Assembly: GCF_964204645.1 (NCBI RefSeq)
Contig: NC_134035.1
Coordinates: 4,464,001-4,528,000 of the forward strand
Source: Tubulanus polymorphus
Lineage: Eukaryota > Animalia > Nemertea
Reading direction: 5' to 3'
DNA length: 64,000 nt
Shown here: positions 1 through 22,257 of the stretch, in pieces
Numbering within the stretch: position 1 is the stretch's first letter
Layout of the letters: each line of letters begins with the position of its first letter
Notes under the pieces: generated by a model
What the model was told of the DNA's origin: nothing
Database searches by the model: none
The model's input: the letters and a program-made list of their open reading frames with translations, nothing else
Program-made: the position numbers and the translations under genes

Positions 1-480
1 GGGACAGTCAGATCATCGATTTCCATGAAGCCCTCGTCCTCTTCCTCTATATCATTATCTTCCGTTTCAGTTTCGGCATTTATCTTTTGTAGGGCTGTAC
101 CTGTCTGTTTGTAGAGGTATTCAATCCCGATTAATTCACCTAAATTTATTTGAAAAATAATAAATTATCATTAAAACATTTACAGATCCTGATTGATGCT
201 TGTAACCTGAAAGAATTTTAACATTTCAAAATGAAATAAAATTAACAATAAATTTAAATCTATTAAGTCTATAAATATTTTACTATGAACTCACCAGTGT
301 ACACTTATGGAGTCCGGAAAGAACAAATATCTTTTTCAAACAAACTTTTGGCGAGTCTGTTCACTGCTTCTTGGACGTGGCCTGAGTATACTCTTAGACT
401 TGAGTGACTGCTACCCGTTGCTGCCGCTCTGTCACGATTCCATCGACTTACTCCATCCAAAAGGAATGCTTGAGGTTTAT
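1..480 (-). mobile_element. Decayed fragment A of Dada-like (DUF6729-type) transposase gene
   Basis: Minus strand reads ...QAFLLDGVSRWNRDRAAA...YSG...VNRL...YTG, then an intron, then GELIGIEYLYKQTG...EEEDEGF. The last part matches the plus-strand element at 15323-15430 (GELIGIEYLYSQTG...EDDEGF). Contains stops. Confidence 0.75.
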
Positions 481-483
481 TTG

Positions 484-545
484 AGGATTTCCCATAGCGA
501 TACCGAATGTCTGTTCGTAAATAAAAAGTCTATCACGGTTTATAA
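484..545 (-). mobile_element. Short Penelope-like reverse transcriptase scrap
   Basis: Minus strand translates to YEQTFGIAMGNP, matching the QxxGxAMGxP motif of Penelope-type RTs. Very short. Confidence 0.5.
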
Positions 546-584
546 TTCCGCGGTCGTCAAAGAACATAAGGGTTTCTGCGGGTC

Positions 585-1360
585 AGCTTCTTATAAATGA
601 TGCCAACGCCAACTGAACCTTTCTTCGAAAACCGTTTTCTATTTTTTAAATGAGCTACATAAGAAGCAGGCAAACTATTGCTTAGCTCACGATCTACATC
701 ATCTAGATGAGTTTCCGTTAAACATACAATATGGTAACCGCAGATAAAATCTAAAGATTCCGGGATGTCAAGCTTGCTTGTCAAACCACACACATTTAGG
801 GTAGATAAATTCATACTAACTGGATCATCAATAATCATATTTTGCCCATCACAAGAGCCTGCAAGTTTCACTATCGGCCGTAACATTAATTCTTTAATTA
901 TTTACAACAAATGAATCTAAACTTTCATTTCCGCTATTTACATCTTAAATATATATGTGAATAATATTTACAAACTCTATAACATAACAACGCTTTCTTG
1001 ACTGGAGCACCGCACGATCAACAAACTCAAAACAGAAGCCCTCCGGGACATCCTAGACGCTGTCCATATCTGAACGATCACGCTGATCACGGATTACTAG
1101 TTTATCGCGGACAGAGAACGCACGCTTTCCACTGGCTTTCGCAGCCCGCAATTCAGGAAGTTTCTCACGCCTATGGGATGCCCATTCCTCCCGGACATGT
1201 TCGCTAAGCCCTGTCGATGATCCGGCAGCAAGGTTTTTCGTGGCGGAATGCACAAATTTTTCCGTCTTCGTGGTGTTCAAATTTTGCAACGATACACAAG
1301 GTTTTTTCAGCCGAGTCTTATTCCTGCCCATTCGATGCGATCTCGCAAATTCTGTACAGC
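585..1360 (-). mobile_element. 5' part of a non-LTR retrotransposon: ORF1 C-terminus plus start of the ORF2 APE endonuclease
   Basis: ORF 557..886 has LNVCGL...IVCLTETHL...GVGIIYK (APE N-terminus). 1100-1350 gives ARSHRMG, IVAKF (frameshifted) and RREKLPELRAAKASGKRAFSVRDKLVI, typical of LINE ORF1 ends. Confidence 0.8.
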
Positions 1361-1369
1361 TACAAATAT

Positions 1370-3245
1370 ATAACCTGTGTTTTGCTTTCGTGCCTTGTGA
1401 TTGTTGCAACATTTTGTAGCTGTGTGGAAAACTGGAATACAGCTGATTAACCATGTGCTGCAATAGGCCACTATAAACAGTAGTCAGCTGTTGATGCAGC
1501 CACACTACGATCAACGTTCCATCGAACCATGCCTTCCAGCAAGTGCGTTCGGAAATGAACACATTCGCGCTCGTTCCTTAATAAGATGGTAAAATCTAAT
1601 AATGAGGAATTTGTATGAAGCCTTAAAAAAGAATAAGCATTGAATGCTAATCATCACGCATAAAACGATTCATGTGTAAACGAAACGATTTCAGAGAAGT
1701 TGATCCTAGCGCGCATCGATAAACCGGAAGATCAATGCCGCCTTTCTTCGTTGATCCTGTTTGTGTGTTTAACGCGAATTCCGGCTGATCCAAGATACAA
1801 CTTATGTGCTGTTGCTGGACCTCCCAAATTGTCCAAATCTTCTTGCTGTCAAGATGTGGTAAGCCAAGAGTATCGACTCCTTGCTCCCCTTCGAATGCTG
1901 TCAGGAGTTCTTTGATCAGATGATATATCTACACCAATGATCGCGTTCTACGTCGACGATGGCGGGCTAACTCCTTTTCGATGGCATAACATCTACATTT
2001 AAACCGAGTTCAGCTGCTTTGGCTCGACGCAGTAACGAAATATCATCTTCGCTCCATTCGAAGATGCAGGCTGATAACCGTTTCATAAAAGTACTGTACA
2101 ACTGTTGTGAATCAGTTATACACCCGACCGCGAATCTCCGCATGAAATGCCAGATATCGAGGTGAATTTTCAAATCTGGCCAATCGTCGAACATTTGAGC
2201 CAACGAATCGCTGTAGCAATCGCGATCAACATACAAAAGTTCAGGAGGGTTGACTCCAGCATCGCGATGATGAGCGATAATTCCAGATGCCATTTTATGT
2301 AAACCATTACCCTCGCTACCTGTGAGCACGCTAATTAGAACTTGTCGTACTCATTGCCAATGTTGGTGGCCCTGGAAGCAGTTCCTGCTGCACTACCAGC
2401 TAATTTCTTTGTAATCTAGTAAAAGTGATGAATTATTGAAAAACGTTGAACTTAATATAAACATACCATTATTTTCTTTACCACTTGCCTTCTTGGTAGA
2501 GTCCATTCTCAAGACATTCCCATATGTCAACGTAATAGCTGCCTTGACCTCCGACAATCTCTTCAAAATATCTAAGGTGTAAGCAGTTAACAACCAGTCC
2601 GGTTGTGGCAAGCTTGGCATCGCTGGCAGTTCTCGAAATACAAATGGTTCAACCAAAGTCTTGGATTGAGCCTCGGGAAATTTTGCGCAGTCCGCGTGAG
2701 CCTAATGAGCCGTTCGCTGCAACCAAGCTTCATCGTGTTGCTCGTTTAACCTTTTCTGTAATTGGGTTGAGCTATTTCCCAAGCCACTCGGCCGGAGAAG
2801 ACGAATGACGCGAACACCACACGTGTAGCGATATGTCAATATGGGTGTGAAAAGCACTCGGTCGGTGTTTTACATCGAGTTGATCGAGCAACTGGCTACT
2901 CCATCCGATTGACTTCTTTTTACATTTCGGGCATTTGAAGTATTCCTTAGCAAAATTATAATAGCCGTCGATATCAAAGACCTGATGCACGTGTGGATAC
3001 AGACCGGCTGACGTTAGTTCGACCTGATTACATGTTACATGTGAGCACAGAATAATTTGAGAGGCCAGTTTTCTGGGCATCGACAAGAGAAGTTTCGTCG
3101 CAAAATAAGGATTTCACCATGATATTGTCTCCGACCCTTCTTGCAACTTGGTGTTGCGTATTCATCGCTGAGCATCAACTCCAAGCACTTGACATACCGG
3201 TTGCAATCTGGCCACTGAGCTGGTTCTCCATGTCTGTTGATCTCG
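1370..3245 (-). mobile_element. Decayed Dada-like transposase copy B, plus a downstream-exon scrap at 3120-3245
   Basis: ORFs 2772..3086, 2393..2656 and 1967..2329 carry YFKCPKC, LRMDSTKK, LYVDRDC and LDIWHFMRR, homologous to 13868-15235. 3170-3235 reads GEPAQWPDCNRYV, out of order relative to the intact gene. Confidence 0.85.
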
Positions 3246-3249
3246 GTTT

Positions 3250-6200
3250 CGAATCAACAGACGTATATTCCTCCCGGCATTTTACGCATTCTTCTGATTC
3301 TTCCAGTATATTGTTATTATCCGCGGTGGCGCGTACATGCGAGTGCAACGCTTGGGCGTCAATGCAGCGGCGGCGTACATTGAGTTTAACGCTTGGACGT
3401 CAATGCGGCGCAATCCGCGCAAATTTAACCGTGACGCCACATCGATTAACTCGGCCAATCCGTTCAAAAAGTTATTGCGCAAATCATCGCAAATGTTGAG
3501 ATGTTCACGGCTCAATATATCAAGGTCCCTTGTGTGAGATACGGACGCCGTGCTGTCCCTGATAACCGCGTCAACAACATTTGTATTACTGCCCCTGGAA
3601 GTTTCCGCATTATTATTATTGGGTTCATCATCGGTGTTCGCATATGTCCTATCTCCCCTCCCCTCAATGAACAAAATACGCCGATCCAAAACAAACAACT
3701 CTTCTAAAACAATTAAACTACCATTTAACCAGAAAAACTCATATAAAAACAAGATGCAGCTCTTTATTGCAGCATAATATTGGCTTAAGGGGACTACCCA
3801 AGCCCTGTGCAGTGTATCAAATTCCGCGGTGATCTGAGAATATAAGGGTATCTGCGGCAGGCCAACCTACGCCAACGCTGTCTAGGTTCGCCGTCTAGAA
3901 AGGCCCACGCAATCAATTGTCTGCACATCGGACACACCGGGTATCTCTCATGCGTGAAAATGTTCATCACGCGTAGGGAACATAGCCGCTGATTGCAACA
4001 TGGTGTCCGGTCAACAGACGTATATTCCTCCCGGCATATTACGCATTTTTCTGATTCTTCCAGTATATTGTTATCATCTACTCCCGCGGCAGCGCTGTAC
4101 ATCGAGTGTAACGCTCCGACGTCAATGTTACGGACGCCGTGCTGTCGTCGATAGCCGCGTCAACAACAATCGTATTACTGCCCCTGGAAGTTTCCGCATT
4201 ATTATCATTGGGTCCATCATCGGTGTTCGTATATGTCCAATCTCCCCTCCCCACAATGGACAAAATACTCCGATCCAAAACAAGCAACTCTTCTAAAACA
4301 ATTAAACTACCATTTAACCAGAAAAACTCATATAAAAACAAGATGCAGCTCTTTATTGCAGCATTTTATTGGCTTAAGGGGACTACCCAAGCCCTGCGCA
4401 GTATAAAAAATTTGGCGGTGATCCAGGAATATAAGGGTTACTGCGGCAGGCCAACCTGCGCCGACGCTGTCTAGGTTCGCCATCTAGAGAGGCCCACGCA
4501 ATCGATTGTCTGCACATAATCGAACAGGCCGGGCGTGCTCTTGCGTGAAAATTTTCATCACACATATGGAACATAGCCGCTGATTGCAACACGGTGTCCG
4601 ATCTACAGACATATATCCCTCCCAGCATATTACGTATTCTTCTAATTCTTCCAGTATATTGTTATTCTCCACGGCGGCAGCGGCGTACATCGAGTGTAAC
4701 GCTTGGACGCCAATGCGGCGGAATTCGCGTGAATTTAACTATGACGCTACATCGATTAACTCGGCCAATCCGTTCAAAAAGTTATCGCGCAAATCATCAG
4801 TGTTGTGATGTTCACGGCTTGATATCTCAAGTTCCCTTGTATGAGGTATGGTATCTAGCCGCTTCAACAACAATCGTATTCCTGCCCCTGGAAGTTTCCG
4901 CATTACTATTATTGGTGTTCATATATGTCCAATCTCCCCTCCCCACGATGGACAAAATACTCCGATCCAAAACAAACAACTCTTCCAAAACAATTAAACT
5001 ACCACTTAACCAGAAAAACTCATATTAAGGACAAGATGCAGCTCTTTATTGCAGCAAAATATAGGCTTAAGAGGACTGCCCAAGCTTCGTACACTATGTC
5101 CATACTTATTTATCGATAACAAAACTTTTGTCACATTTTTCCAATACACCTCGTTTTCATATTCACTTTCCAAACGGTCTTTATCTATCTACTGTAACTA
5201 TACATAATTTTCTCATCCGCAAACCTTTGTATCTCCCCAAATATATTCCTAATACATACAGATACTCCACTCCTTAATGGTGCTTGTATTCTTTGAATAT
5301 TATTATTATTATTATTAGGTTCATCATCGGTAGTCGTATATGTCCAATCTCCCCTCCCCACAATGGACAAAATACTCTGATCCAAAACAAACAACTCTTC
5401 CAAAACTATTAAACTACCACTTAACCAGAAAAACTCATATTAAGGACAAGATGCAGCTCTTTATTGCAGCATAATATAGGCTTAAGAGGATCGCCCAAGC
5501 CCCATACACTATCTCCATACTTATTTATCGATAACAAAACTTGGGTCACATTTTTCCAATACACCTCGTTGTCATATTTACTTTCCAAACGGTCAATATC
5601 TATCTACTGTAACCATACATAATTTTCTCATCCGCAAACCTTTGTATCTCCCCAAATATATTCCTAATACATACAGATACTCCAACCCTTAATGGTGCTT
5701 GTATTCTTTGAATCCCCAATTGAAATCTCTGCAATAAAAACCTTATGGTTGTTTAAGGAAAAAGAATAAGATTTCAATTTTGTGGTTCAAAAACCAAACA
5801 ACATTAACATCCATTCTTGAACCAAAACAGTTTCCTCGTACTTTGTACTAACAAAAAAATTGCCATAAAAAACAACAAAAATTTGATGTGCCCTTCTCGC
5901 GCTGCAGACCTAGAATGACTTAACACATCCATGTTTGGTGCAGCCACGCTTCCTAAATTTACATACATACACCCAAACCCTGTGATAGGTCACATACCAA
6001 CCACATCACTTCCTGACTGAAAAACTCACTTGCCACCGTTCCGATAGGTGGTGTGTGGATATAGGACAACACGTTCATTCTCCACTCCGTGCCGAATAAA
6101 AGTAATAGTCCTTAGGCATATTACGCATTCTTTTGATTCTTCCAGTATATTGTTATCATCCGCGGCGGCAGCGGCGTACATTGAGTTTAACGCTTAGACG

Positions 6201-6560
6201 CATCAATGCAGCCGAATCCGCGCGAATTTAGCCGTGACGCTACATCGATTAACTCGGCCAATCCGTTTAAAAAATTATCGCGCAAATCATCAGTGTTGTG
6301 ATGTTCACGGCTCAATATTTCAAGTTCCCTTGTATGTGATACGGACGCCGTGCTGTCATCGATAGCCGCGTCAACAACAATAGTATTATTGCCCCTGGAA
6401 GTCTCCGCATTATAATTATTGGGTTCATCATCGGTGTATGATGTCCAATCTCCCTTCCCCACAATGAATGAAATACTTCGATCCAAAACAAACAACTCTT
6501 CCAAAACAATTAAACTACCACTTTACCAGAAAAACTCATATAAAATCTTTTTTTTACATC
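3250..6560 (-). repeat. Imperfect tandem array (about 5 units, 0.4-1.1 kb) of RING-finger cassette fragments
   Basis: The block TCCAAAACAAACAACTCTTC...CCAGAAAAACTCATAT recurs near 3690, 4280, 4970, 5390 and 6485. Repeated peptides include TDDEPNNNNAETSRG, DDLRDNFLNGLAELIDVAS and NNILEESEECVICREE. Confidence 0.9.
3794..4102 (-). pseudogene. RING-finger (C3HC4-like) fragment; a second, frameshifted copy lies at 4383-4690
   Basis: CVIC-x11-CCNQRLCSL(R)-x12-CPMCR. One ligand Cys is mutated here but is intact (CSIC) in the 4484..4690 copy. Confidence 0.75.
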
Positions 6561-6599
6561 AATTAACTCGGCCAATCTGTTCAAAAAGTTATCACGCAA

Positions 6600-9165
6600 A
6601 TCATCATATAAAATTGGCTCTATATTTCTTGTTTTGTTACCATACTTTATGAATTAAACCAAAAAGTCTCCCCTCTGCTTTTCATAGGGGCTTGGGACAT
6701 AGTCCAGGCAGCATTAAAAACTTGTTTTGGTTTTCTTTCTAATTTTTTAAACATTTTTTTATAATAGATATGGAATATGTAATTAAAACTTCTTCCCTCA
6801 GACTGCACGACATTTCCGACAGATGCGACATTTCCTTTCACAATACTTTTTAACCTATTCACCGCTTTCAGCTTCCTGAAGTTGGCGTTTGCGATAACAC
6901 CGAGTTGTTGACGGAACTGACTGAATGTTCTGATGTACTGATTGAATGTTCTGATTTACAGAAGTCGCTGTAATTGGTCCAGTCGGAATAACAGTTACCT
7001 GTATTGGCGGCAGCGGTTGTTTCGGCAGGATATTTATTCCAGAGTCTCTTGTTTTGGCTTTCCCAGCATTATTTTCCTAGCTGATGAACTGAAAATGCTG
7101 AGCGGCAAGAGGAGGTTTCAGAATCAGCTGTTTTACTACTGGATCTCGAATTATATCTGTTGTCAGTGGTGGTAACGGCAGTGTGATTCCTTGTTCTAGC
7201 ACCACGGTTTCTTTTCTCTTGAAACGTTTGTTGTACCTTACAAGAATAAGAACAAATCATACGAATTAATTTCTTTTTCATCTGTTGGAATTAAAAAATC
7301 GTAATTTGAGAATTTGTTTTGTATATATATCATAAAACACTTATGATACTGGGTAGTTTGAGAAAAATCAATTGCGGAGATATCTACTAGATAGGATGTG
7401 CAATCTAAAACTCACCATTGACTGTGTTATTTATCTCAACAAGTTGGATGTTGCAACCATTCAAAACAAGCCCGTTGTTCATCACCCTATCTTGATCGAG
7501 CTGTAAGATTTCGTAACCTAAGTAAAACGCAGGGTCGTGCCTGATTTTGTGCGAGTCATTGCTGGATGCAGGTTGCAAAGACCAATGCCTCGACATAGCG
7601 ATTACAGTCGGGCCACTGAGCAGGACTTCCATTCTTGCCGATAAAACACCTAAATCAAGTTTTCAAAAATAATGGTTACCGTATATTGAATATATTTCAA
7701 AGAAAATGCCTCATTTGTGGCTTAAATCGAAATATGATTAATATTAAATAAATACCTTCTAGTACTTTCAACAACAAGCAAAACGTTTGTTTTCGAAACT
7801 TTAAATCTGCCCTGTGTCAACTTTGCCTTGTGTCTCGGAGAGAAGTTAGTGTTTTTCTTGTCGTATGGATCCAGGTTATTCCATAGTGATACAATTTTCC
7901 TTGCTTGCACGTTTGTGATTATTTGGTTTTGGGCACTGAACTGTGACGGATTCTAGAACTTAGAATTACAGAAATATCATTAGAAAATACAAAAATTATG
8001 AAAACATATACATGTACATAAATTTCAACCATCGGATAATCAGTTTAATTGGAGAGACAAAAAGAGATGCAAAACGCCACTTACACTCATCTGATGGCAA
8101 ATCAACATAATTGTCCTCTTCACCAGGAATTGGCACCCGTGTTGCTGTTTGAACTGGGCAGTATTTTAAGATCATCGCATTCATCAATAAAGCCTCCATC
8201 ATCAGCAGCAGTGTCACGAATACATGCAACATCACCATCTGTTTTATCGGGATCGGGCAGATTTTGAAGAGGTTCTCCAGTCTGTTTGTACAGATACTCG
8301 ACACCTAATCAATTCACCTATGTTTTGTAATTAGACACTACATAAAAATGGTCAAAATATTAGATATGTTACACTGTGAAATATAGAATATATATAACCT
8401 GTGTGCTGCTTAGGTTCTATGTAATTGATGCAGCATTTTGAAGCTGACGAAAACAGCAGATTGACTGTGTGCTGCAAGAGGCCACTGACAACAGTTTGGC
8501 CAACAGTTCAGCTATTGATGCAGCCACAGTACGGTTGACGTTCCATCGCACCAAGCCTTCCAGAAAGTATGCTGGAAAGGGAACATCATTTGTGCTTGTT
8601 CCTTAAAAAGATGGCCACATCTAATAATGAGAATTTGGTATGATGCCTTGAAAAAGAATACGCATTGAATGATAATCACCGCGTATAAAACGGTTCACGT
8701 GTCAATGAAAGAGACTCCAGAGATGTTGATCCACGTGCGCATCAATAAACCGGAAGATCAATGCCGCCTTTCTTAGATCCTGTTTGTGTGTATAACGAAC
8801 ACTCCGGCAGATCCAAGATGCTGCTAATGTGACTTCCCAAATTGTCCAGATCTTCTCACTGTCAAGAAGTGGCACGCCAAAAGTATCGACTCCTTGGGCC
8901 CCGTCAAATGCAGTTAGGAGTTCCTTGATTAGACGATAAATCTCCTCTGATGATCACGTTCTTCGTCGTCAATGACGGGCCGTCTCCTTTTTTGATGGCG
9001 CAACATCGATAGTACAGCTACTTCAGCTCGACGTAGTAATGAAACATCATCTTTGCTTCATTTGATGATGCAGCCCGACAAACGTTTTACAAACGTGCCG
9101 TACAACCGATGGGAATCAGCTGTACAACAGACAGCGAATCTCTGCATGAAATGCCAGATATCATG
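6600..9165 (-). mobile_element. Decayed Dada-like copy D (3' two-thirds, with introns)
   Basis: DIWHFMQRF near 9150; CARGSTSLES (putative catalytic E) near 8715; QARKIVSLWNNLDPYDKK at 7722..7910, near-identical to 15866..16114; ICRKCRAV near 6815; 3' UTR 6660-6730 matches 19110-19190. Confidence 0.85.
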
Positions 9166-9172
9166 ACTGATT

Positions 9173-9517
9173 TTAACGAGGAATTGTCAGTAACAATTCC
9201 CGATCGTAACGCTCGGTTTTCTCAATTGTCCGTATAAATCGGGCCGAATGCCCTTTTACCGCATTTAAGTCCTTTGGGTGGTTTATTTCTACGTGATCTT
9301 TAAGTATGCTAACTCTGTGGGACTTAAATATACACAGCGTGCACTGAAAGTTCAATTGACGATTTATTCCGACAGTTTCGCAAATATCTCCGTTTATTAG
9401 TTCCCTCCCACAACTTTCTCGAACAATATGAACATTTCCACACTTTCTCACATTTTGGGAATGGTTCATATATGCCAAGGGGTCCAAAGGGTGAGGACTA
9501 AATTTAATTTTCATCAA
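9173..9517 (-). other. Short ORF with a C2H2-like finger, probably another TE fragment
   Basis: CTLCIFKSHRVSILKDHVEINH pattern; the ORF abuts the truncation point of Dada copy D. Confidence 0.3.
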
Positions 9518-10029
9518 ATCAAATTATGATTTCTAACTCTTTCATCGCTATACACTACATGTAGCATATCCATTTTCTTTCAAATAGCACTGTTTATAGT
9601 TGACATAAAACCACAACTTTGTATCAGTCATCACTTCAGTAACACGCGACACTTAAGAAAATTCAAGGTAGCTGTTTCCCTTTTTGCATGTGGGCTGAAG
9701 GCCCCCCTCTCCCCCAAATACCGCAATTCATATAATGTCCCCCAAGGGCTCTAAAGCTTTAAAGAATCAACCCTTCTTGTGAAACTCGATTAGGATGGTA
9801 CGATGGATCCTCCCATCGCGTATTCCTTGAAACAGCATACTAACAAGGATGCATGAATTGTTGAGTAAAAATAGATATTTGTGGACATATATCCCAAATA
9901 TTGAATTCTTTATTCGTTTAAATTTCTGATGTATAATCTATAATCGATCTCGGGCTAAGTTTTAAGAGTCCACGGTACAAGCCACGCCGCATTTGCATAT
10001 TCGTAGCAGACACCATAACCAATAGCGAG

Positions 10030-10980
10030 ATGGCCTTCGTCAATGTCACCTTCGCTCAACCAATCGGTCACTCTTACCACACCTATTTCGCTCTGAAATC
10101 GATTGTAAAACTATCGGGTTCGAACAGAACAGTGGCGCTGATCATATTCCCGATCGTATTCGGTCTGGGTACGTTCGGCAACACGGCCAGTTTCCTGGTG
10201 ATGAGTAGCCGAAGATTCAGACGATTTTCGTACGCGAATTACTTGATGGTTTTGTCAGTTGCCGATTTATTGCTGTATATCAATATGGCCGGTATGCCGT
10301 TGTGGGAGTACGCGTTGAGAAGAGTTGATTTTTCCAGTGTCGGGCAGTGTATGGCTTACGAATTCGTTTTCCAATTCGCGTATTGCTGGAGCACGACTTT
10401 GATCGCGATTATAACAGTGGAAAGAGTCCTCGTTGTCGTTTTTCCGTTCACATCGCGGGTTATATGCACGGTTAAATGTTCTCGCCGCGTCATGTTAGCA
10501 ATGATTGTTCCCAATTGCCTTGTCGCCAGTCACACGTTTTTTGGAATGCGTTTTTCCGAGCAGTTGAAATGCTACTATTACAGTTTCAACTTCCAGAAAC
10601 AGCTTTACACTTACCTAGTCGCCTTTTACTACGCCGTTCCGTGCGTCCTTCTGATCGTTTGTAATTTAGTAATCATTATTTTCATGCGGCGCGGTTTGAA
10701 AGTCGGGGAAACCGGACGAAAGACGGCTAAAGCCCGCCGTACAACGATAATGCTGATAACCGTATCTCTGGCTTTCGTGGTTACCACATTGCCCAACACG
10801 ATCACGTCCTTTCTACCGATTCCCGAACACACTGTAGAATATCTCTATACGATGTTCACGGTGATAACGTCGCTGAATTATTCGTTTAATTTCTATATTC
10901 ATCTGTTACTGGGGTCTGAAGTCCGCGCGTTCGTACTGGAGAAGATTACCTGCAGAACGGAGGCGAAAATTGCTCGGTAA
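10030..10980 (+). CDS. Intronless rhodopsin-like (class A) GPCR, paralog 1; orphan peptide-receptor-like or chemoreceptor-like
   Basis: 316 aa with 7 hydrophobic segments; GTFGN (TM1), LSVAD (TM2), ERV in place of DRY (TM3), Cys in TM3/ECL2, LP (TM6), NYSFNFYIH (TM7). Confidence 0.93.
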   Translation: MAFVNVTFAQPIGHSYHTYFALKSIVKLSGSNRTVALIIFPIVFGLGTFGNTASFLVMSSRRFRRFSYANYLMVLSVADLLLYINMAGMPLWEYALRRVDFSSVGQCMAYEFVFQFAYCWSTTLIAIITVERVLVVVFPFTSRVICTVKCSRRVMLAMIVPNCLVASHTFFGMRFSEQLKCYYYSFNFQKQLYTYLVAFYYAVPCVLLIVCNLVIIIFMRRGLKVGETGRKTAKARRTTIMLITVSLAFVVTTLPNTITSFLPIPEHTVEYLYTMFTVITSLNYSFNFYIHLLLGSEVRAFVLEKITCRTEAKIAR

Positions 10981-11984: not shown

Positions 11985-12089
11985 TAGGGCTAGTCATCCG
12001 GTGTTTTTATTTCGCGGAAACGCGGAATCTCGGAATTTTACAATAACGCGGAATTTATTTGATTTCACTATGAATAATAACCGGGCTTA
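11985..12089. mobile_element. Possible small MITE
   Basis: Imperfect inverted ends TAGGGCTAGTCAT / ATAACCGGGCTTA with internal CGCGGAA repeats. Confidence 0.3.
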
Positions 12090-12159
12090 GTATCAGACAA
12101 GGCACCGGTGCTGATGCCCTTGGTGCCAGCGAATCTTCTCTTGAGAATTGGAATGAACC

Positions 12160-12375
12160 TTCCAAATGTTGACCAATCACAGCCATCGACTGTTCCAATT
12201 TCATTCCAAATGTTCCAAATGTTAACCAATCAGCGGCGAGCTTATGAACGGCGTCGGCTCGTTCTATATCCGGTTCACAACTATACAGTATTCAGCGCGA
12301 TCATTTGAATCGACGAATTTCTCTTCAAAAAATATATCGTTTCCTGTCGTAGATCTAGAGTTTGCTGATCCAAGT
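12160..12375 (+). promoter_or_regulatory. Putative Pol II promoter and non-coding first exon of the transposase gene
   Basis: Two AAATGTTRACCAATCA CCAAT boxes (~12163, ~12217), splice donor GTAAGT near 12373, and acceptor CCCTCTAG at 13140 six nt before ATG 13147. Confidence 0.55.
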
Positions 12376-12982
12376 AAGTGTTTTTATAATATTTAACATA
12401 TTTTTCATCGACGAGTGAAGGTTTCATCGTATTTGGTTGTCGAAATGTCCTGAAAATCGCATCTTAAAATCTGAAATTCGAGTCCGTCGAACCCGGAAGT
12501 AATTTCAATAAAGTTTTATTGTTTTATTTATTTCTGCATGTTTAGAACTATTTAAAGTTCGTTGGTTTCGTGTTAATGTTATCGGTCATCGATGCGCGGA
12601 TGATCTTTTATTCCGTGGGCCTTTTAAGACTACAATAGCCGCCTAGTTTGAAATCAATTCAATGACAATAACAATTCCGAACAATGAACAGCGCGTCGGT
12701 CCGGGCCCACGTGGTGAAGTGAAGCCCCTTTGTCACAAACATTGACAAAACATCTATTGAACGATTCCTTTGTTATGTGAATGTGCATTTTATTGCAACT
12801 TTTGAAGCTTATTCAAAATCTGGCTTCATTTATCAGATATTTTTAAGGGCCTATTTTTAATATATGATAGTAGCCTACTGGATGACAAAGGCTAAAGCCT
12901 TCATATTTAAGCCAGAATTATCTTAGGCTACTTTCTCTATAGGCCTGCATCTAGTCTATCTGAACTTATGTTATGTGATACT

Positions 12983-13058
12983 GTCTGCATGGTGTAGAGG
13001 TAACACCCTCGATTCAGAAATGGATTGAGAGCCCCAGGTTCAAATCCTGGTGCAGACA
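12983..13058 (+). ncRNA. tRNA-like structure with a non-decoding anticodon arm, in intron 1 of the transposon
   Basis: Acceptor GTCTGCA/TGCAGAC (7/7); D stem GTGT/ACAC with loop AGAGGTA; arm CTCGATTCA-GAAA-TGGATTGAG; variable loop AGCC; T stem CCAGG/CCTGG with loop TTCAAAT; A box TGGTGTAGAGG; B box GGTTCAAATCC. Confidence 0.8.
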
Positions 13059-16000
13059 ATTGACATGACGTATTGTTTGTTCTGTGGTATTTTTATGCTT
13101 ATTTTACATATATTTTTTTGAATTATTTTTCTCCCTCTAGGTTAACATGAATTCGAAACCGAAATTCAATCGGTTAGGTAACGGCGAGCTCGTGTTGGGC
13201 TATTCATCTGAGGCTGTGGAGTTGAAGAAAGTTTCGAAAAATTCAGGAACTTATCAGTGTAAAGACCCGACATTAGTCCACAAAGTTGCGCTTCATGAGA
13301 CCAGGCTCGCCGGTGGAGATCCATCAAATGAACAGGATGTGCTTTCCCTATATAAGTTGCAGTTTGGAATGTTTAGGGGCCAGTCCTTTAAATGGCTCAT
13401 CGAAAACGGACTCGGATATTCCAGTTGGATTATCAACAGTATGAGGCGTGAACAGCCATCAGACACGCCTCTTTCAAAAAACAAATTTGCTTTTAAGAAA
13501 TACTTCAGTTTTTTCCCGGAATGCGAAGAAGCTCTTGCCTTAAAGGAAAAAGAACGAATGAAAAGAACAAAATCGAAGAACCTCAAAGGTACACTTGATT
13601 TAATGTTATGATAATGATTAAATTTTTAGAAAAACATTGAAATTTTCAAACAATCTCTTACTATTAACTGTACTTTTATTTTGAGCAGACAATACTGAAC
13701 TCGACGACGCTGAACTAGTTACAGCTGTCGTAAATATTGAAACCATGCAGAAGCAGCAGCAGCAGCAGCAGAGTGAATCTACAGCAGAACCGGAGAAAGT
13801 CTCTGGTAATTATTATTTACAAATAATTTGAAAAAAAATTTATGATTAGTTATATTTTCATAATTTTATGTTCCGTTTCTGGTATTTTGAATTTGTAGAA
13901 AATCAGCAGTTCCCGCTACCAGCTGGCTGGAAAGAGATCCTCCCTGAAATGGATCATAAATGGATTTCGCATGCATTGTTTAAACTTAAGCGAGGTGACA
14001 AAGCCGAACTCGATGCTACCAAAATCGATCGTTTGTGGTATTATCCACCCCAACCTCCAGTGGCGCTTCAGCAGATACCGAACCCAGATCCATACTTTGG
14101 AACAAAGTTATTGTTGTGGATGCCACGTAGACTGTGGCACATGAAATTCAAGTGCAGCGTATGTCCCGATATTGAACTGACTGGCGCTGGAATTTATCCG
14201 AGAACTAGGCAGGTACTGGATATAGATGGGTTTTACTCATTGGCCGGAGAATACCTCGAATGTCCTGCGTGCCATAAGAAGTTTATAAGCTGGAGCCAGG
14301 AAATGCTGTCACAGCTCGATGTTGGCCATCGAAATCTTTTCGCGCCGATTCTGACTTATCGCTTTGCATGTGATATTCGCGTTATCAGACTTCTTCGGCA
14401 ACGCGGCCTCGGTAATAGCGCGACACAGCTGCAAAAGACGATTTCGGAACAACACGCGGAATCATGGCTTACTAAAACTGCGCACTATTTGACCGACTGT
14501 GCTCAGTACAAGAACGCGATCGATAATCGTTTGATAACCCAGTCATCTGCATTCAAAGATTCCCCAGAAATGCCATCTGTACCGAAACCGGATTGGTTTC
14601 TCCGCGTTTATTGTTTGGACGTTTTATCAAGATTGGACGAAGTCAAGTCCAACATAACTTCGGTGTTCAGAAATGTCCTGAAGATGGACTCAACGAAAAA
14701 GGTAAAGCATCACAAAATAAATTTCATTTCGCACTTTTAGCCGATTAAACTCTCATGGACCCTTTTTTCTTCTTTTTTTCAGATTGTAAAAAAGCTACAA
14801 GGTCATGCAGCCGGTACAGCAAATTGGGTAACAAATATGGGGAACGAGTTCGGCCAGGTGTTGATTAGCGTTTTGACGGCAGGTGAGGGCAAAGGTTTGC
14901 AGCAGATGGCCACCGGTATAGTGAAGCGATATTCGGACGCAAATGTAAACCCGCCAGTCGCCCTATACGTGGATCGCGACTGTTGCAATGGACGCACCAG
15001 TGATATGTTTTCTGCCTGGCCAGGTTTAGAAGTACGTCTGGACATATGGCATTTTATGCGACGTATTGCTATTGGGTGTACAACTGATTCGCATCAGTTG
15101 TACGGAGTATTCATGCGGAGATTGTCCGGTTGTATCTTCGAATGGAGTACTGATGACATTGCATTTTTAGTAAGTGCGAAGAGATCGGAACTCGGTGTGC
15201 CGTCACTGTCCGATAGTGATGTGCTGGCCCGTTGAAATATTCAGGTATTTTTGGTTCAATTTTATTTCCATTAATTGCTGTTTATTTATTCGCAATAATC
15301 TTAAAACAAAAATTTATTTTAGGTGAACTTATCGGAATTGAATATCTGTACAGTCAGACTGGAAAAAGTTTACAATCAGCAGCAGAAGACGTGGACAACT
15401 TGACAGAATTAGAAGACGACGAAGGCTTCAATGAGGAAGTTGATGATATGACGATTCCTCCACCTCTTCCGACTGAGCCAGCTCGTTTACCGCTGCCAGA
15501 CTGCGATGAAGACATCGATATGCCATCAACTGAGTGTATGTGTTAACATAAACTGAAAAAAAACCATGAATTAATACTGCAGGCAGCAACTCAACAAATT
15601 ATTCATGAATAGAAATGTAATTAAGCCTTTATCTTTTACTTTCCAGTACTGGAATCATTATCTGTGGCTGCACCAGTTGATATCAACGTTCCACCGGAGA
15701 ATGAATCTCAGGATGCACAGTTTACGGTAAAAAGAATTTTGTTTTCTATCCCTATTTTAATTGGTAGTTTATCGCCTAATTCAATTTGGTTGTAATTGAT
15801 TTTTTATTTTGCTTTAGGAATCAGTCGGACCAGATAATATCCCTGGATTTGAGAAGGTCCAGCAATTGGCTGATTATTTAGTGGATTTACGTCAATGTCC
15901 GGTTCTGACTAACGTACAGGCGAGGAAAATTGTATCTCTATGGAACAACCTCGATCCATACGACAAGAAATCCACAAAATTCTCTCCACGACATAAGACG

Positions 16001-16973
16001 AAATTAACCCAGGGCAGATTCAAAGTGTCAAAAACAAACGTTTTGCCTGGTGTTGAAAGTACAAGAAGGTATTTAGTTAATATTAATCATTATTTCGATT
16101 TAAGCCACAAATGAAGCATTTTCCCTAATATATAACCAATTTTCGGTAACCATTATTTTTGAAAACTTGTTTAAGGTGTTTTATTGGCGAGAATGGTAGT
16201 CCTGCCCAGTGGCCCGACTGTAATCGATACGTCGAGGCATTAATCTCACGTCTCTGCGACCTGCATCCAGGAATGACTCGAACCAAATCAGGCACGACTC
16301 AACGTTGGACTTTGGTGATGAAAACATATAGATCAATTAGAGATAAAGTCATGAGCAACGGGCTGGTTGTAAATGGTTGTAATATACAACTGGTCGAGAT
16401 AAATAACACGACTTTAAGTCAGTGGTAAGTTTTAGATTGCACATTCGTAGATATCTCCTCAATTGATTTTCCTCAAACTACCCAGTATCACGAGTGATAT
16501 ACAAACATCTTTACAGATGAATAAGAAATGTAATGAATTTTTATGATTTTTTTTTCTTTTTCTTCAAAGGTACAACAAACGTTCCAAAAGAAAAGAAACC
16601 GTAGTGCTACAGCAAGGGATAACGTTGCCGACGCCACCACTGACGACAGATACAATTCGTGATGCAGTATTGAGACAGGCGATTCCGATACCTCCTCCCA
16701 CCGCTCAGCATTTTCAATTCAATAACCCGGAAAATGATGCTGGGAAAGCGAAAACAAGAGACTCTGGTGTAAATATACTGCCGAAGCAACCACCGCTGCC
16801 ATTACACCTACCGGTAACCATTGTTCCGGCCGGACCATGTACAATGACTCCAGTTATTCAGAGCGTTCTATCGGTTCCATCCACTACGCAGTGGTATCGC
16901 AAACGACAACTTCACAAAGCTGAGAGCGGCGAATCAGTAAAGAAATATCGTGAGAGGAAAGGTCCAACCATAT

Positions 16974-18812
16974 CCATAGCTAACATTGCTAATAAATTTA
17001 ATGAGTACTTTGTAAACATCGGTAATAAGCTTGCCGAAAAGATAGGTTTGGGTACCGATGGGATTAGCATGAAAGTAACTAAAAAAATTTTTGACTTAAT
17101 TAAAGATCCTCTCTGCCATGTTTTTAACATGAGTCTACAGACTGGAATTGTTCCGGACAAATTAAAAATCGCTAGAATTCGACCTTTATACAAAAGTCGT
17201 GACAAAGATAACTTTAATAATTACCGGCCCATCTCAATTTTGCCTTGCTTTTCAAAGATTCTTGAAAAAGTCGTGTACAACAGACTAATGTCTTATTGTG
17301 ATAAATTTTCTATCATAAATTCAAATCAATTCGGTTTTAGAAAGAATCACTCCTCTGCCATGGCAGTCATCAAAATTATTGATGAAATTTCATATAATCT
17401 TGAAAATAAAAATCCCACTATCGGTGTTTATTTGGACTTATCTAAAGCCTTTGATACAGTCAACCATGAAATATTATTGTCAAAATTAGATTTTTATGGA
17501 ATTAAAGGTCGCGCACTTTGCTGGTTTAGAAATTATTTGGAAAACCGACAACAAACTGTTCAAATTGATAATTGTAAGTCTCAACTTTTGAATATATCTA
17601 CTGGTGTGCCTCAAGGTTCCATTTTGGGACCGTTACTTTTTTTAATATACGTAAATGACTGCGTTAATGTCAGCAACATTTTGAAATTTACGCTTTTTGC
17701 AGATGACACTAATGTCTTTGCGAGCGGTTCCGATATTCATCACCTTGCATTGACCGTGTCTAGTGAACTTGATAAACTAGCCACGTGGTTTTACGCTAAT
17801 AAATTATCTTTAAACTTGCTAAAAACTCATTGCATGGTATTTGGCTCACAACTACCACTTAACATTTCGATTCAAATCAGCGGAATTAATATTGATCAAG
17901 TTCATAGCACAAATTTTTTGGGTATAAATATTGACGATAAACTTTCATGGATTGATCATATCAATAATGTTCAACGCAAGGTATCGAAGAGTATCAGTAT
18001 GTTAAATAGATTAAAACGATTTTTACCTGAGAAAACTCTTATTCAATTGTATTTTAGTTTAGTGGAACCGTATTTAAGTTATTGTAACATAGTCTGGGCT
18101 CAAAATTTTAATGTCTATTTAGATTCATTATTACTACTTCAAAAACGTGCGGTTCGAATAATAACAAATTCATATTATTTAGAACATACTGATCCACTCT
18201 TTAAAAGACTGAAAATACTGAGAATTAAAGAAATGAACAAATTACAGTTAGGATGCTTCATGTTTAATTATAACAAATCCATGCTACCTGATTCTTTTAA
18301 TAACTATTTTCAATTTCGACATGTACTCCACAATTATCAAACTCGTAGCCAAAACAATATGGAAATCCCTCGATTTCAAACTCGAAGAAATAAATTTTCG
18401 GTAAAGGTTTCTGGTCCAAAACTTTGGAATTCACTCGATTCAACTTTAAAGCAGTCGAAGAATGTTTATGTATTTAAAAAGAATTTCAAGCAGTATCTGT
18501 TAACGGGTCAATAGTAATTTAACATTTGTTTAATATGCGTTTATAGGTCGATCCGAAATTAACTTGTCATTATGGATGTGTGTGCGTGCGTGCGTGCGTG
18601 CGTGCGTATGCGTGAGTGTTGTGGTGCAGGGTTGTGTACATGTGTGTGTGTGCGTGCGTGTGTTTGATTTCTATGGGCGCCAGGGCCATGTTTTATGGAT
18701 ATAAGTTTGTAACTTCTCCTGGTGTCCATCGACTTGAATTACATTATTTTATTATATTATCTTGTTGTAATATTCTAGTGTAATTTAATTCGTGAATAAA
18801 GAATAAATAATA
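16974..18812 (+). mobile_element. 5'-truncated LINE (CR1/L2-like) with RT domain, inserted in the transposase
   Basis: NYRPISIL, QFGFR, LDLSKAFD, GVPQGSILGP, FADD and FLGINID motifs; stop at 18514; 3' tail AATAAAGAATAAATAAT; flanked by ATAT on both sides. Confidence 0.92.
18577..18662. repeat. (GT)n/(GCGT)n microsatellite in the LINE 3' UTR
   Basis: tgtgtgcgtgcgtgcgtgcg... runs visible directly. Confidence 0.9.
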
Positions 18813-19529
18813 ATATGTCGGAAATGTCGAGCAGTTCGGGGGCCTGACCATAAACAATATTACGGAAGTTGGTATTGCCCCTCGACTGAAACAGAACAAT
18901 TTGAGACCTGGCTTCAGTCTTTACCAGCTTATAAAAAACGAAAATTGTGATGATGTAAATAATGTTTATATATATATTCATGTGATCTCTGAAAATAAAA
19001 CTTCTTCATAAATAGAATTAATTAATGCTAATGATACCAGTACAAAAATGTTAATTGTATAGAGCATATCTGTTATTTAAAAAAGTTTAAAAATTAAAAA
19101 AAAAAAACAACCAAAACAAGTTTTTAATGCTGCCTGGACTGTGTCCAGAAGATCCCAAGCCCTTATGAAAAGCAGAGGGGAGACTATTTGGTTGATGGTA
19201 AAAAACAAAAGAAAAATATGGAGCAAATTTAATAAATAAATTAATTAGTAAATGTATCAAAGTTTTTTGTTTCATTTTGTAGTTAGGTACCGGTACATAT
19301 ATGGGATTCGAAATAAATAATGAATTAGGAAATGTAGAGGTTTGTTAATTCTGTTTCAATTTTCAGTAGGTATATATGGGATTCGAGTTCAAAATCGGAA
19401 CAGTGTACATTCAACATGACTTCTTTTCGAGTTAACTACCTTTGAACATTCCCCATTTAGTTAACTTTTAGTTCGAGTATATGTGTGTTGGGGGCGCGGG
19501 TTGACCTAGAAGATTGCGGGGGATTTTTT

Positions 19530-19562
19530 GCGCTGAGTCAGGTTCGAATTCCACTATTGACA
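19530..19562 (+). pseudogene. Remnant resembling the 3' part of tRNA-Leu(CAG), internally deleted
   Basis: GCGCTGAGTCAGGTTCGAATTCCACTATTGACA compared with metazoan tRNA-Leu(CAG) GCGCTGCGTTCAGGT...GGTTCGAATCCCACTCCTGACA (recalled); B box present. Confidence 0.5.
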
Positions 19563-20481
19563 CGCAATATCATTTGATATTATTTTATGACAGATATCGT
19601 CGACTGGCTGCCAATTGCCCTATTTACTCGCAATAGCTAATGATATGCCATTTTTTCATTTAGAAACCTCCATCAAGTACCGATAATAAGATGCAAGAAA
19701 TCAGCACGTAGGAACGACTTTGTAATAGCGATCATAAAGTACGAAGTTAAAGAAAAAATGAAACCATTTAATAAACTTAGATATCATTTACCTTTTATTT
19801 ACTTTTCTAGATACACCAAATATACCGAAATGATAGATAAACATCAACCACAATCTAGATGCAGGACACGTCGAATATTCAAAGCCAGAATGAAATGTTC
19901 ATTGGGAGACGCAAACTAAGGCAAATGTCAGAACATATACTTCATTTTTTGTTCGTTACCATACTTTTCCTGACATTTTTCATGACCAAGGCGAACACAA
20001 ATATTATGATACATTGCATATCAGCAGACACCAATACTTAGTAATAGATTATAGAACTATCGAGATAGTAGAACGCAAGGTACTTAAAGATCAGGGAAAT
20101 CAATTATTTTCCGTGCAAAACAATATGAAAACAGGACCTCGTGAGCACAGGACCTATGGATCTTAGTTCTTTTGAACTGTCGAGTTTCGCAAAAATAGTT
20201 ACTTTTAAGTCGATTTTATTTCTTCAGTAATTGATTTAGGGATTAATCCCTTTTGTGAAACTCGACCGAGGTCGCACACTTTATGACTTTGGCAATCTAG
20301 TATTCCTTAAGACACAGAATAACAAGATGTCACACGAATTGATGAATAAAGATAGTTATTTGTGGATATTTTAGTTCTTTAATCAGTTTGATTTATCTAA
20401 CGCGAACGAAATTATGTTTGGCGATGTTTTACGAGTCGACGGCACAAGCCACATCACATTTGCACCAGAACCAATAGCGAG

Positions 20482-21432
20482 ATGGTTATCGTCAATTTCA
20501 CCTTCGCTCAACCAATCGGTCACTCTTACCACACCTATTTCGCTCTGAAATCGATTATACACCTGTCTGGTTCGAACAGAACAGTGGCGCTGATCACTTT
20601 TCCGATCGTACTCATTCTGGGTACGTTCGGCAACACGGCCGGTTTCCTGGTGATGAGTAGCCGAAGATTCAGACGATTTTCATACGCGAATTACTTGATG
20701 GTTTTGTCACTTGCCGATTTATTACAGTGTATCAGTTTGACCGGCATGCCGTTGTGGGAGTACGCGTTGAAAAGCGTCAATTTCTCCAGCGTCGGACAGT
20801 GTTTAGCTTACGAATTCGTATTCCAATTCGCGTTTTCGTGGAGCACGACTTTAATCGTGATTATTACCGCAGAAAGAGTCCTCGTTGTCGTTTTCCCGTT
20901 CACATCGCGGGTTATATGCACAGTTAAGTGTTCTCGCCGTGTCATGTTAGCCATGCTCGTTCCCAATACTCTAGCCGCCAGTCACATGTTTTTCGGAATG
21001 CGTTTTTCCGAGCAGTTGAAATGCCACTATTACAGTTTCAACTTCCAGAGGCAGCTTTATTTTTACATAGTCACCTTTTCCTACGCCGTTCCGTGCGTCC
21101 TTCTGATTGTTAGCAATATGGTAATCGTGATTTTCATGCGGCGAGGTTTAAAAGTCGGGGAGACCGGGCGAAAGACGGCTAAAGCCCGCCGTACAACTAT
21201 AATGCTGATAACAGTATCTCTGGCTTTCGTGGTTACCACATTGCCCAACACAATCACGTCTTTTCTTCCGATTCCCAAACATATTGTAGATTATTTCTAT
21301 ACGATGTTCACGGTGATAACGTCGTTGAATTACTCGTTAAATTTCTATATCTATCTATTACTGGGGTCTGAAGTCCGCATGTTCGTACTGGAGAAGATTA
21401 CATGCAGAACGGACGCAAAATTTGCTAGGTAA
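20482..21432 (+). CDS. Intronless class A GPCR, paralog 2
   Basis: 316 aa, colinear and highly similar to 10030..10980. Confidence 0.93.
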   Translation: MVIVNFTFAQPIGHSYHTYFALKSIIHLSGSNRTVALITFPIVLILGTFGNTAGFLVMSSRRFRRFSYANYLMVLSLADLLQCISLTGMPLWEYALKSVNFSSVGQCLAYEFVFQFAFSWSTTLIVIITAERVLVVVFPFTSRVICTVKCSRRVMLAMLVPNTLAASHMFFGMRFSEQLKCHYYSFNFQRQLYFYIVTFSYAVPCVLLIVSNMVIVIFMRRGLKVGETGRKTAKARRTTIMLITVSLAFVVTTLPNTITSFLPIPKHIVDYFYTMFTVITSLNYSLNFYIYLLLGSEVRMFVLEKITCRTDAKFAR

Positions 21433-22096: not shown

Positions 22097-22257
22097 TAGA
22101 CAAAAACCCACAATAAAAAGAAAAATATCTGGTAGCTTAACGTTTCAACTCAATTCTATGAGCCATTTTCAAAACAGTTTTTGAAAATGGCTCATAGAAT
22201 TGAGTTGAAACGTTAAGCTACCAGATAGTTTTTCTTTTTATTGTAGGTTTTTGTCTA
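22097..22257. repeat. ~160-bp near-perfect palindrome, probably inverted ends of a Penelope-like element
   Basis: TAGACAAAAACC...GAGCCATTTTCAAAA / TTTTGAAAATGGCTC...GGTTTTTGTCTA, with a ~4-nt centre at ~22176. Confidence 0.9.
22176..22219 (+). ncRNA. Minimal type I hammerhead ribozyme-like motif (U3-A8 variant)
   Basis: Stem I AGTTT/AAGCT; core TTGAAAA plus T; stem II GGCTCA/TGAGTT; GAA; palindromic ACGT stem III; cleavage triplet GTT (site after 22214). Confidence 0.62.

What the first reader, a model, noticed from the sequence alone, without database searches (positions are those of the whole stretch)
12983..13058. A transposon-borne tRNA mimic: perfect cloverleaf with the anticodon loop replaced by a 9-bp stem and GAAA tetraloop
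Seen: inside intron 1 of the Dada-like element is a 76-nt sequence in which every tRNA stem pairs (acceptor 7/7, D 4/4, T 5/5) and Pol III A and B boxes are intact. The anticodon arm folds as CTCGATTCA-GAAA-TGGATTGAG (9 bp, two G-U pairs, GNRA loop), so it should not decode. An alternative reading is anticodon CAG (Leu) plus a 5-nt insertion after position 37. That would match the tRNA-Leu(CAG)-like site the element sits in, but 5 nt is very short for a tRNA intron. Decayed tRNA pseudogenes and SINE heads usually lose pairing, so full pairing suggests selection on shape. Known: Dada transposons target small-RNA genes (U6, U1, tRNAs). Inference: the element may carry its own Pol III unit or tRNA-shaped RNA, for example to recruit TFIIIC and co-localise with tRNA-gene targets, to act as a chromatin barrier, or to be cut by RNase P/Z and so regulate the transposase pre-mRNA. 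I know of no description of this arrangement.
Basis: partly seen in the sequence, partly recalled or inferred. Interest (0 to 1): 0.85.

Follow-up and report, generated by a model that had tools for sequence, protein, structure and literature searches.

The report
tRNA mimics inside Dada transposon introns
A DNA transposon of a U6-targeting kind carries a non-decoding, tRNA-shaped RNA module inside an intron of its own transposase gene, and related transposons from other animals carry different tRNA-shaped modules in other introns, conserved by selection, which points to an undescribed way these elements control their own transcript.

Summary
The 76-mer is real: a fully paired cloverleaf (Rfam tRNA 51.8 bits) with intact tertiary invariants and a 9-bp anticodon arm closed by GAAA. 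It is single-copy and has no close host tRNA. It lies on the sense strand of predicted intron 1 of a Dada-U6-lineage transposon (12120-19527). This copy is defective and sits off-target in a high-copy repeat, not in tRNA-Leu.

New here: Dada relatives from other animals carry two further, different tRNA-shaped modules in two other introns. One clade's module is 80-92% conserved where four-fold sites are 45-48% identical. The acceptor stem, T arm and an outer leader-trailer stem are kept. The anticodon arm is extended, scrambled or absent, so the GAAA loop is a local detail.

Best reading: a shape-read RNA element of the transposase pre-mRNA, most likely an RNase P/Z substrate like mascRNA; a splicing enhancer is the main rival. 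No RNA data were available, and most Dada lineages lack the module.

I found no paper describing it. Earlier scan notes reported the 3' twister motif in other Dada copies of this genome, but not this module.

The parts
12983..13058 (+). tRNA-shaped module: acceptor 12983-12989/13051-13057, D arm 12992-13006, 9-bp anticodon arm 13008-13029 with GAAA loop 13017-13020, 4-nt variable loop, T arm 13034-13050, discriminator A 13058; no encoded CCA
12962..13078 (+). Outer leader-trailer stem that extends the acceptor stem (about 15 further pairs)
   Evidence: duplex -13.4 kcal/mol, shuffle p 0.002; similar outer stems around the modules of relatives
12374..13140 (+). Predicted intron 1 (5' untranslated region) of the transposase gene; the module ends 82 nt before the 3' splice site; first ATG of the next exon at 13147
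   Evidence: GT/AG consensus seen in sequence; not confirmed by RNA
12120..19527 (+). Dada transposon of the U6-targeting lineage; no terminal inverted repeats, short sub-terminal inverted repeat
   Evidence: 5' end shared with L004, which follows a U6 half gene and TTGCGC; 3' end matches L022/L023/L024 ends joined to U6; PF20499 284 bits
13147..16968 (+). Dada transposase exons; DSTKK, DRDCC and DIWH motifs present; residues equivalent to 623-776 of P0248, including the catalytic E motif, are deleted near 15220-15229
   Evidence: exon-wise translation and tblastn
16960..18815 (+). LINE (reverse transcriptase) insertion interrupting the last coding exon; boundaries approximate
   Evidence: PF00078 119 bits; the transposase resumes at about 18807
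19121..19183 (+). Twister-P1-like ribozyme motif in the 3' untranslated part of the element
   Evidence: 54.4 bits, E 5e-10, below gathering 67.2; also in other Dada families
19528..19533 (+). TTGCGC hexamer (the U6 target duplication) on the right side only; the left side 12114-12119 reads ATGCCC
   Evidence: one-sided hexamer replacement is described in PMC8869645
11990..12119 (+). Left part of the diverged dispersed repeat the element interrupts; the right part is about 19534-19625
   Evidence: joined empty site 165/234 identical to repeat L139; family with 335 candidates in the genome

Best explanation
The 76-mer is a non-decoding tRNA mimic that works as folded RNA inside the RNA polymerase II pre-mRNA of the Dada transposase. 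Shown: it folds as a cloverleaf on a longer stalk; related Dada elements carry other such modules, always sense-strand and intronic; one of these families is under purifying selection; the anticodon arm is dispensable. Inferred: the kept parts (7-bp acceptor stacked on a 5-bp T stem, canonical T loop, leader-trailer pairing) are read by host tRNA-processing nucleases, RNase P and RNase Z, as for mascRNA. Cleavage would compete with splicing, so it would cut a share of transcripts and damp transposase output, or trim a small tRNA-like RNA out of the intron. In this window the module is inherited from an active ancestor, since this copy is dead.
For: Modules in three intron positions and three separate places on the transposase tree: window intron 1; the intron after DSTKK in L023, L024, L029, L031, L060; and the intron after the DDAEL exon in L029 6425-6481. 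A strict acceptor+T-arm descriptor gives 4 hits, all sense-strand intronic, and 0 in 10 local shuffles of 559 kb. Module identity is 80-92% vs 45-48% at four-fold sites and 57-70% in the rest of the intron for the five deep pairs (p 5e-6 to 1e-10 vs four-fold). In the four full modules of that clade, 5/42 stem columns vary vs 12/32 unpaired columns. 95% of cells are paired and 10 pairs change on both sides. The Levitt pair is G15-C48 here and A15-U48 in L023, L029 and L029 6425-6481 (seen in sequence). The anticodon arm is extended (window, L024), scrambled (L023, L029, L031) or absent (L060, L029 6425-6481). Outer stems occur in all seven, p 0.002-0.054, combined 2e-4 over three families. MALAT1 processing needs such pairing (PMC8457004).
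Against: There are no RNA data at all (one search lists no RNA holder). Most sampled Dada lineages, including the young near-identical family in this genome, have no such module, so it is not needed for transposition. The D-loop GG is lost in L024, L029 1195-1268, L031 and L060, so the elbow is not invariant. Intronic mitochondrial-derived tRNAs are not processed as tRNAs in 293T cells (PMC7722341). Most two-sided changes separate the window sequence from the L023 clade and may only reflect different parent tRNAs. Selection on the window's own module could not be measured because no sister copy keeps intron 1.
Confidence: 0.42

Rival explanations
1. The module is an uncut structural splicing enhancer, like the nuclear intronic mitochondrial-derived tRNAs (nimtRNAs), which helps the transposase pre-mRNA splice.
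For: nimtRNAs raise splicing in a cloverleaf- and T-arm-dependent way and are not processed (PMC7722341). All modules lie about 80-130 nt from a 3' splice site. A long outer stalk suits a stable, uncut element.
Against: nimtRNA activity fell on deletion of any arm, including the anticodon arm, and worked in reverse complement. Here the anticodon arm is dispensable and the exact 7+5 bp geometry and nuclear-type T loop are kept. Sister introns without the module exist (76-nt intron in L035).
Confidence: 0.25
2. The module is an internal RNA polymerase III promoter or TFIIIC-binding site acting at DNA level (barrier against silencing, nuclear positioning), or it makes its own small RNA.
For: The window copy has good A and B boxes and a T5 run 32 nt downstream. 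The B box is kept in all modules.
Against: TFIIIC binding does not need acceptor, anticodon or outer stems (established knowledge), yet these are kept. The A-box GG is lost in several relatives. L024 and L031 have TTTT inside the anticodon loop, and the L023 clade has no T4 for 67-116 nt downstream. The lineage targets U6, not tRNA genes.
Confidence: 0.17
3. In this lineage it is a neutral passenger: a captured tRNA gene or a head of the genome's tRNA-derived telomeric repeats that happens to be well paired.
For: It is single-copy, in a dead element, with no sister intron to test. It is 70-77% like degenerate tRNA-like heads near contig ends. The 5-nt insert could have arisen in one inverted-duplication event.
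Against: No host tRNA is closer than about 76%, yet every stem and tertiary invariant is intact. The repeat heads have broken acceptor stems and telomere-like tails, which the module lacks; there is no poly-A tail or flanking duplication. A random 5-nt insert closes the arm in 32/1024 cases and with GNRA in 4/1024. Analogous modules in relatives are under selection.
Confidence: 0.13
4. It is a working tRNA-Leu(CAG) gene with a 5-nt intron.
For: ARAGORN with introns allowed reads (cag) i(38,5); U33, purine 37 and A73 fit.
Against: The third-last intron base is U, so there is no pair with U32, whereas eukaryotic tRNA splicing needs an A/G there and a bulge-helix-loop (PMC10275265). The variable loop is 4 nt, while host tRNA-Leu(CAG) is 84 nt with a long arm and aligns poorly. 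Relatives keep no anticodon.
Confidence: 0.03

Closest known systems
mascRNA / menRNA (MALAT1, NEAT1 3' ends)
   Same: Non-decoding tRNA mimic inside a Pol II transcript, reduced or altered anticodon arm, acceptor stem extended by leader-trailer pairing (PMC8457004).
   Different: Here it is intronic in a protein-coding transposase gene of a DNA transposon; no upstream triple helix or A-rich tract was seen; the sequence is unrelated; cleavage is untested.
[quoted passage not shown]
   Same: Cloverleaf kept inside an intron of a Pol II gene, close to splice sites.
   Different: These modules look like nuclear tRNAs (A box, B box, canonical T loop), are carried by a transposon, and tolerate loss of the anticodon arm.
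Dada-U6 transposons (PMC3706591, PMC8869645)
   Same: Transposase motifs, intron-containing gene, no terminal inverted repeats, sub-terminal repeat, TTGCGC/GCGCAA hexamer, relatives inserted antisense in U6.
   Different: Neither paper mentions an internal tRNA-like element or ribozyme in the parts read; this copy is off-target and defective.
tRNA-derived SINE heads and tRNA pseudogenes
   Same: A and B boxes, tRNA ancestry, no usable anticodon.
   Different: Single copy, no tail or target duplication, all stems paired, and relatives under purifying selection.

Membership tests
Decoding tRNA (RF00005) | Cloverleaf with canonical stems and tertiary invariants | tested here: met
   51.8 bits; invariants listed
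Decoding tRNA (RF00005) | 7-nt anticodon loop | tested here: not met
   12-nt region folds as 4 more pairs plus GAAA, 8 kcal/mol better than open
Intron-containing tRNA-Leu(CAG) | A-I pair (U32 with third-last intron A/G) and 3' bulge | tested here: not met
   third-last base is U; A38 pairs directly with U32
Intron-containing tRNA-Leu(CAG) | Long variable arm as in host tRNA-Leu | tested here: not met
   4-nt variable loop vs 84-nt host tRNA-Leu
mascRNA-type RNase P/Z substrate | Acceptor plus T-arm stack with canonical T loop, anticodon arm dispensable | tested here: met
mascRNA-type RNase P/Z substrate | Leader-trailer pairing extending the acceptor stem | tested here: met
   p 0.002 in window; 0.004-0.054 in relatives; geometry differs from the single bulged A of MALAT1
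mascRNA-type RNase P/Z substrate | Cleavage by RNase P and Z, CCA addition | not testable with these tools
   no RNA run holds the stretch
mascRNA-type RNase P/Z substrate | Upstream ENE triple helix at a lncRNA 3' end | not tested
   the position is intronic in a coding gene; no such motif was noticed or hit by Rfam
nimtRNA | Mitochondrial tRNA origin | tested here: inconclusive
   nuclear-type A/B boxes and 60-76% identity to host nuclear tRNAs; host mitochondrial tRNAs were not compared
tRNA-derived SINE | High copy number, tail and target duplication | tested here: not met
   one BLAST hit, one pattern hit, single-copy read depth
Dada-U6 transposon | Dada transposase with D, D, DxxH, E motifs | tested here: inconclusive
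   D, D and DxxH present; the E-bearing part is deleted in this copy
Dada-U6 transposon | Termini and hexamer shared with U6-inserted copies | tested here: met
   groups with U6-inserted L004 at SH-aLRT 97
Dada-U6 transposon | Inserted in a U6 gene | tested here: not met
   this copy lies in a dispersed repeat; off-target copies are described in PMC3706591

The most novel reading that the evidence does not exclude
U6-targeting Dada DNA transposons have repeatedly and independently recruited non-decoding tRNA mimics into their introns as host-nuclease-read switches. Together with a 3' twister ribozyme, these would process or throttle the transposase transcript: RNA-level self-control in a cut-and-paste DNA transposon.
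Probability: 0.4. Interest if true: 0.85.

Novelty: new variant of a known kind. Interest (0 to 1): 0.67.

Why it matters
tRNA mimics inside Pol II transcripts are known from a few host loci (mascRNA, menRNA, nimtRNAs), but I found none described as cargo of a DNA transposon. Three different modules in three different introns, one with measured purifying selection, form a natural experiment on which tRNA features a transcript-embedded mimic must keep. They suggest that DNA transposons tune their transposase through host tRNA-processing or splicing machinery, which bears on how target-specific elements persist in essential multicopy genes and on using Dada as a delivery tool. The test is cheap: a 230-nt intron in a reporter.

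Tried and rejected
tRNA-Leu target: rejected after rebuilding the empty site. SINE or pseudogene family: BLAST, pattern and covariance-model searches of the genome found only this copy, ordinary tRNAs and the degenerate telomeric heads. Sister copies with intron 1: none; L002 is 5'-truncated by another insertion and L004 is internally deleted. Parent tRNA: could not be assigned, since Arg, Gln and Pro types are all roughly 60-76% alike. The exon-2 protein search found no homologues. The first metagenome scan and both viral scans were blank. About 60 metagenome loci and the Antedon and Lytechinus loci had no module, but many are short fragments. Weak descriptor hits in L010, L019, L030, L052, L069 are near the shuffle background and were not counted. 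Literature searches for a transposon-borne tRNA mimic or twister in Dada found nothing relevant.

Full report
Observation. Window 12983-13058 (+) is the only Rfam match above a gathering score in the 64 kb (tRNA, 51.8 bits) and the only ARAGORN gene (tRNA-???). It folds as described, with z -4.8. In intron context every pair has probability 0.78-1.0, and the closed 9-bp anticodon arm is 8 kcal/mol better than an open 12-nt loop. All tertiary invariants checked are present, including G15-C48, G18, G19 and the T loop.

Copy number and origin. BLAST, a degenerate pattern and a covariance model find no second copy in the 268-Mb genome. Reads of a separate DNA run cover it at background depth; one other sample shows no difference across 12846-13137, and another holds the whole stretch in one contig (one of these may be the assembly's source). 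The nearest sequences sampled are 60-77% alike: host Arg, Gln and Pro tRNAs and a family of degenerate tRNA-like heads followed by telomere-like repeats, whose acceptor stems are broken. No parent can be named. The reading 'tRNA-Leu(CAG) with a 5-nt intron' fails: there is no A-I pair or bulge (requirement in PMC10275265), and the variable loop is 4 nt against a long arm in the host tRNA-Leu.

The element. The module lies in predicted intron 1 (12374-13140) of a Dada transposon running 12120-19527. Its 5' end matches L004, which follows half a U6 gene and TTGCGC. Its 3' end matches elements from other species joined to U6, and it groups with L004 on the tree. It is therefore of the Dada-U6 lineage (PMC3706591). 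This copy is off-target: the rebuilt empty site aligns with a dispersed repeat of about 335 candidate copies, and TTGCGC stands on the right side only, as described for other Dada (PMC8869645). The tRNA-Leu likeness is limited to a B-box-like stretch (22/500 shuffles score as well). The copy is dead: about 150 codons with the catalytic E are deleted and a LINE interrupts the last exon. A twister-like motif lies at 19121-19183. No sister copy keeps intron 1.

Relatives. I fetched about 75 Dada loci from other assemblies. Five carry a tRNA-shaped module in the intron after the DSTKK exon: L023 2398-2470, L024 8942-9011, L029 1195-1268, L031 7966-8037 and L060 975-1030. L023 and L024 are flanked by U6. 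A second family in L029 carries a different, 57-nt module at 6425-6481 in another intron, with acceptor 7/7, D arm, T arm and no anticodon arm; the same intron in the sister L035 is 76 nt and empty. These hosts are unnamed; the L023 clade sits beside Acropora elements, so corals are likely. On a quick tree (SH-aLRT only; exon pieces under 170 aa left out; pieces within a locus joined in the script with X at stops) the carriers fall in at least three places. Different introns and sequences suggest repeated gain, but one old gain with movement and losses is not excluded. A strict descriptor gave four hits, all sense-strand and intronic, and none in ten shuffles. Most lineages, including the young family in this genome, have no module.

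Selection. In the L023 clade the module is 80-92% identical between elements whose four-fold sites are 45-48% identical and whose remaining intron is 57-70% identical; changes fall mostly in unpaired columns (5/42 vs 12/32). Across five modules 95% of cells pair and ten pairs change on both sides, though most of these separate the window from the L023 clade. What is kept everywhere is the acceptor stem, the T arm with its canonical loop, and an outer stalk (p 0.002-0.054; combined 2e-4 over three families). What is free is the anticodon arm: 9 bp with GAAA here, U-rich 6-8-nt loops, or absent. The GNRA loop is thus a local solution to 'no anticodon', not the conserved feature. Selection on the window's own module is inferred from these relatives, not measured.

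Mechanism. Conserved pairing of acceptor and outer stems, sense orientation, intronic position, and Pol III terminator-like runs inside two modules point to function as folded pre-mRNA (about 0.67 in all). Within that, the retained 7+5 stack, T loop and leader-trailer pairing match what mascRNA uses for RNase P/Z processing (PMC8457004); cleavage racing with splicing would damp transposase (0.42). An uncut splicing enhancer like nimtRNAs is the main rival (0.25; PMC7722341). A TFIIIC or Pol III role (0.17) explains the boxes but not the stems. A neutral passenger (0.13) remains possible for this lineage. None of these steps is shown: no RNA run holds the region.

Known or new. It works like a mascRNA- or nimtRNA-type mimic but is a member of neither; it is not a decoding tRNA or a SINE. 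The two Dada papers and nine literature searches gave no account of internal tRNA mimics in Dada or other DNA transposons; the library lacks most subscription papers and Repbase notes. Earlier scan notes (unchecked) name the host as the ribbon worm Tubulanus polymorphus and report the twister in other Dada copies; I confirmed the twister motif, not the name. Verdict: real, new variant of a known kind, interest 0.67.

Noticed in passing
window 19121-19183; L002, L004 (twice), L006, L010-L013, L022 9034-9095, L138 17154-17232: Twister-P1-like motif in the 3' untranslated part of distant Dada families; it could stop read-through into the antisense U6 or tRNA target. No paper found linking twister and Dada.
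   Followed up: partly
L029 6425-6481: 57-nt tRNA mimic with no anticodon arm in an intron of a second Dada family; its 3' remnant is in L060 2872 and L070 784.
   Followed up: yes
L121, L123-L131, L134, L135 (G000 C9 1.2-2.4 Mb, C1 31.3-31.8 Mb, C3 0.36 Mb and others): Family of degenerate tRNA-like heads with broken acceptor stems followed by telomere-like repeats near contig ends.
   Followed up: partly
window 87-9180 (minus strand) and L002, L003: Cluster of decayed, partly tandem Dada copies in inverted orientation next to the element, each with different deletions.
   Followed up: partly
window 11990-12119 and 19534-19625; L139-L146: Unnamed dispersed repeat, about 335 candidates at 96-99% identity, with a sharp 5' start and a B-box-like motif; the Dada copy sits in an old member.
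   Followed up: partly
window 16960-18815: 5'-truncated LINE inserted in frame with the last transposase exon, giving a 655-codon open frame.
   Followed up: no
window 9937-10977 and 20401-21429: Two intronless GPCR-like paralogues flank the element; a third related piece lies near 23800.
   Followed up: no
window 22115-22238: 60-bp, 95% complementary hairpin (MITE-like).
   Followed up: no
window 44491-63999: 101-bp satellite, about 193 copies, strongly strand-skewed.
   Followed up: no
L024 10377-11186: Four tandem tRNA-Thr-like repeats, 245 bp apart, just beyond the U6 target of a Dada element.
   Followed up: no
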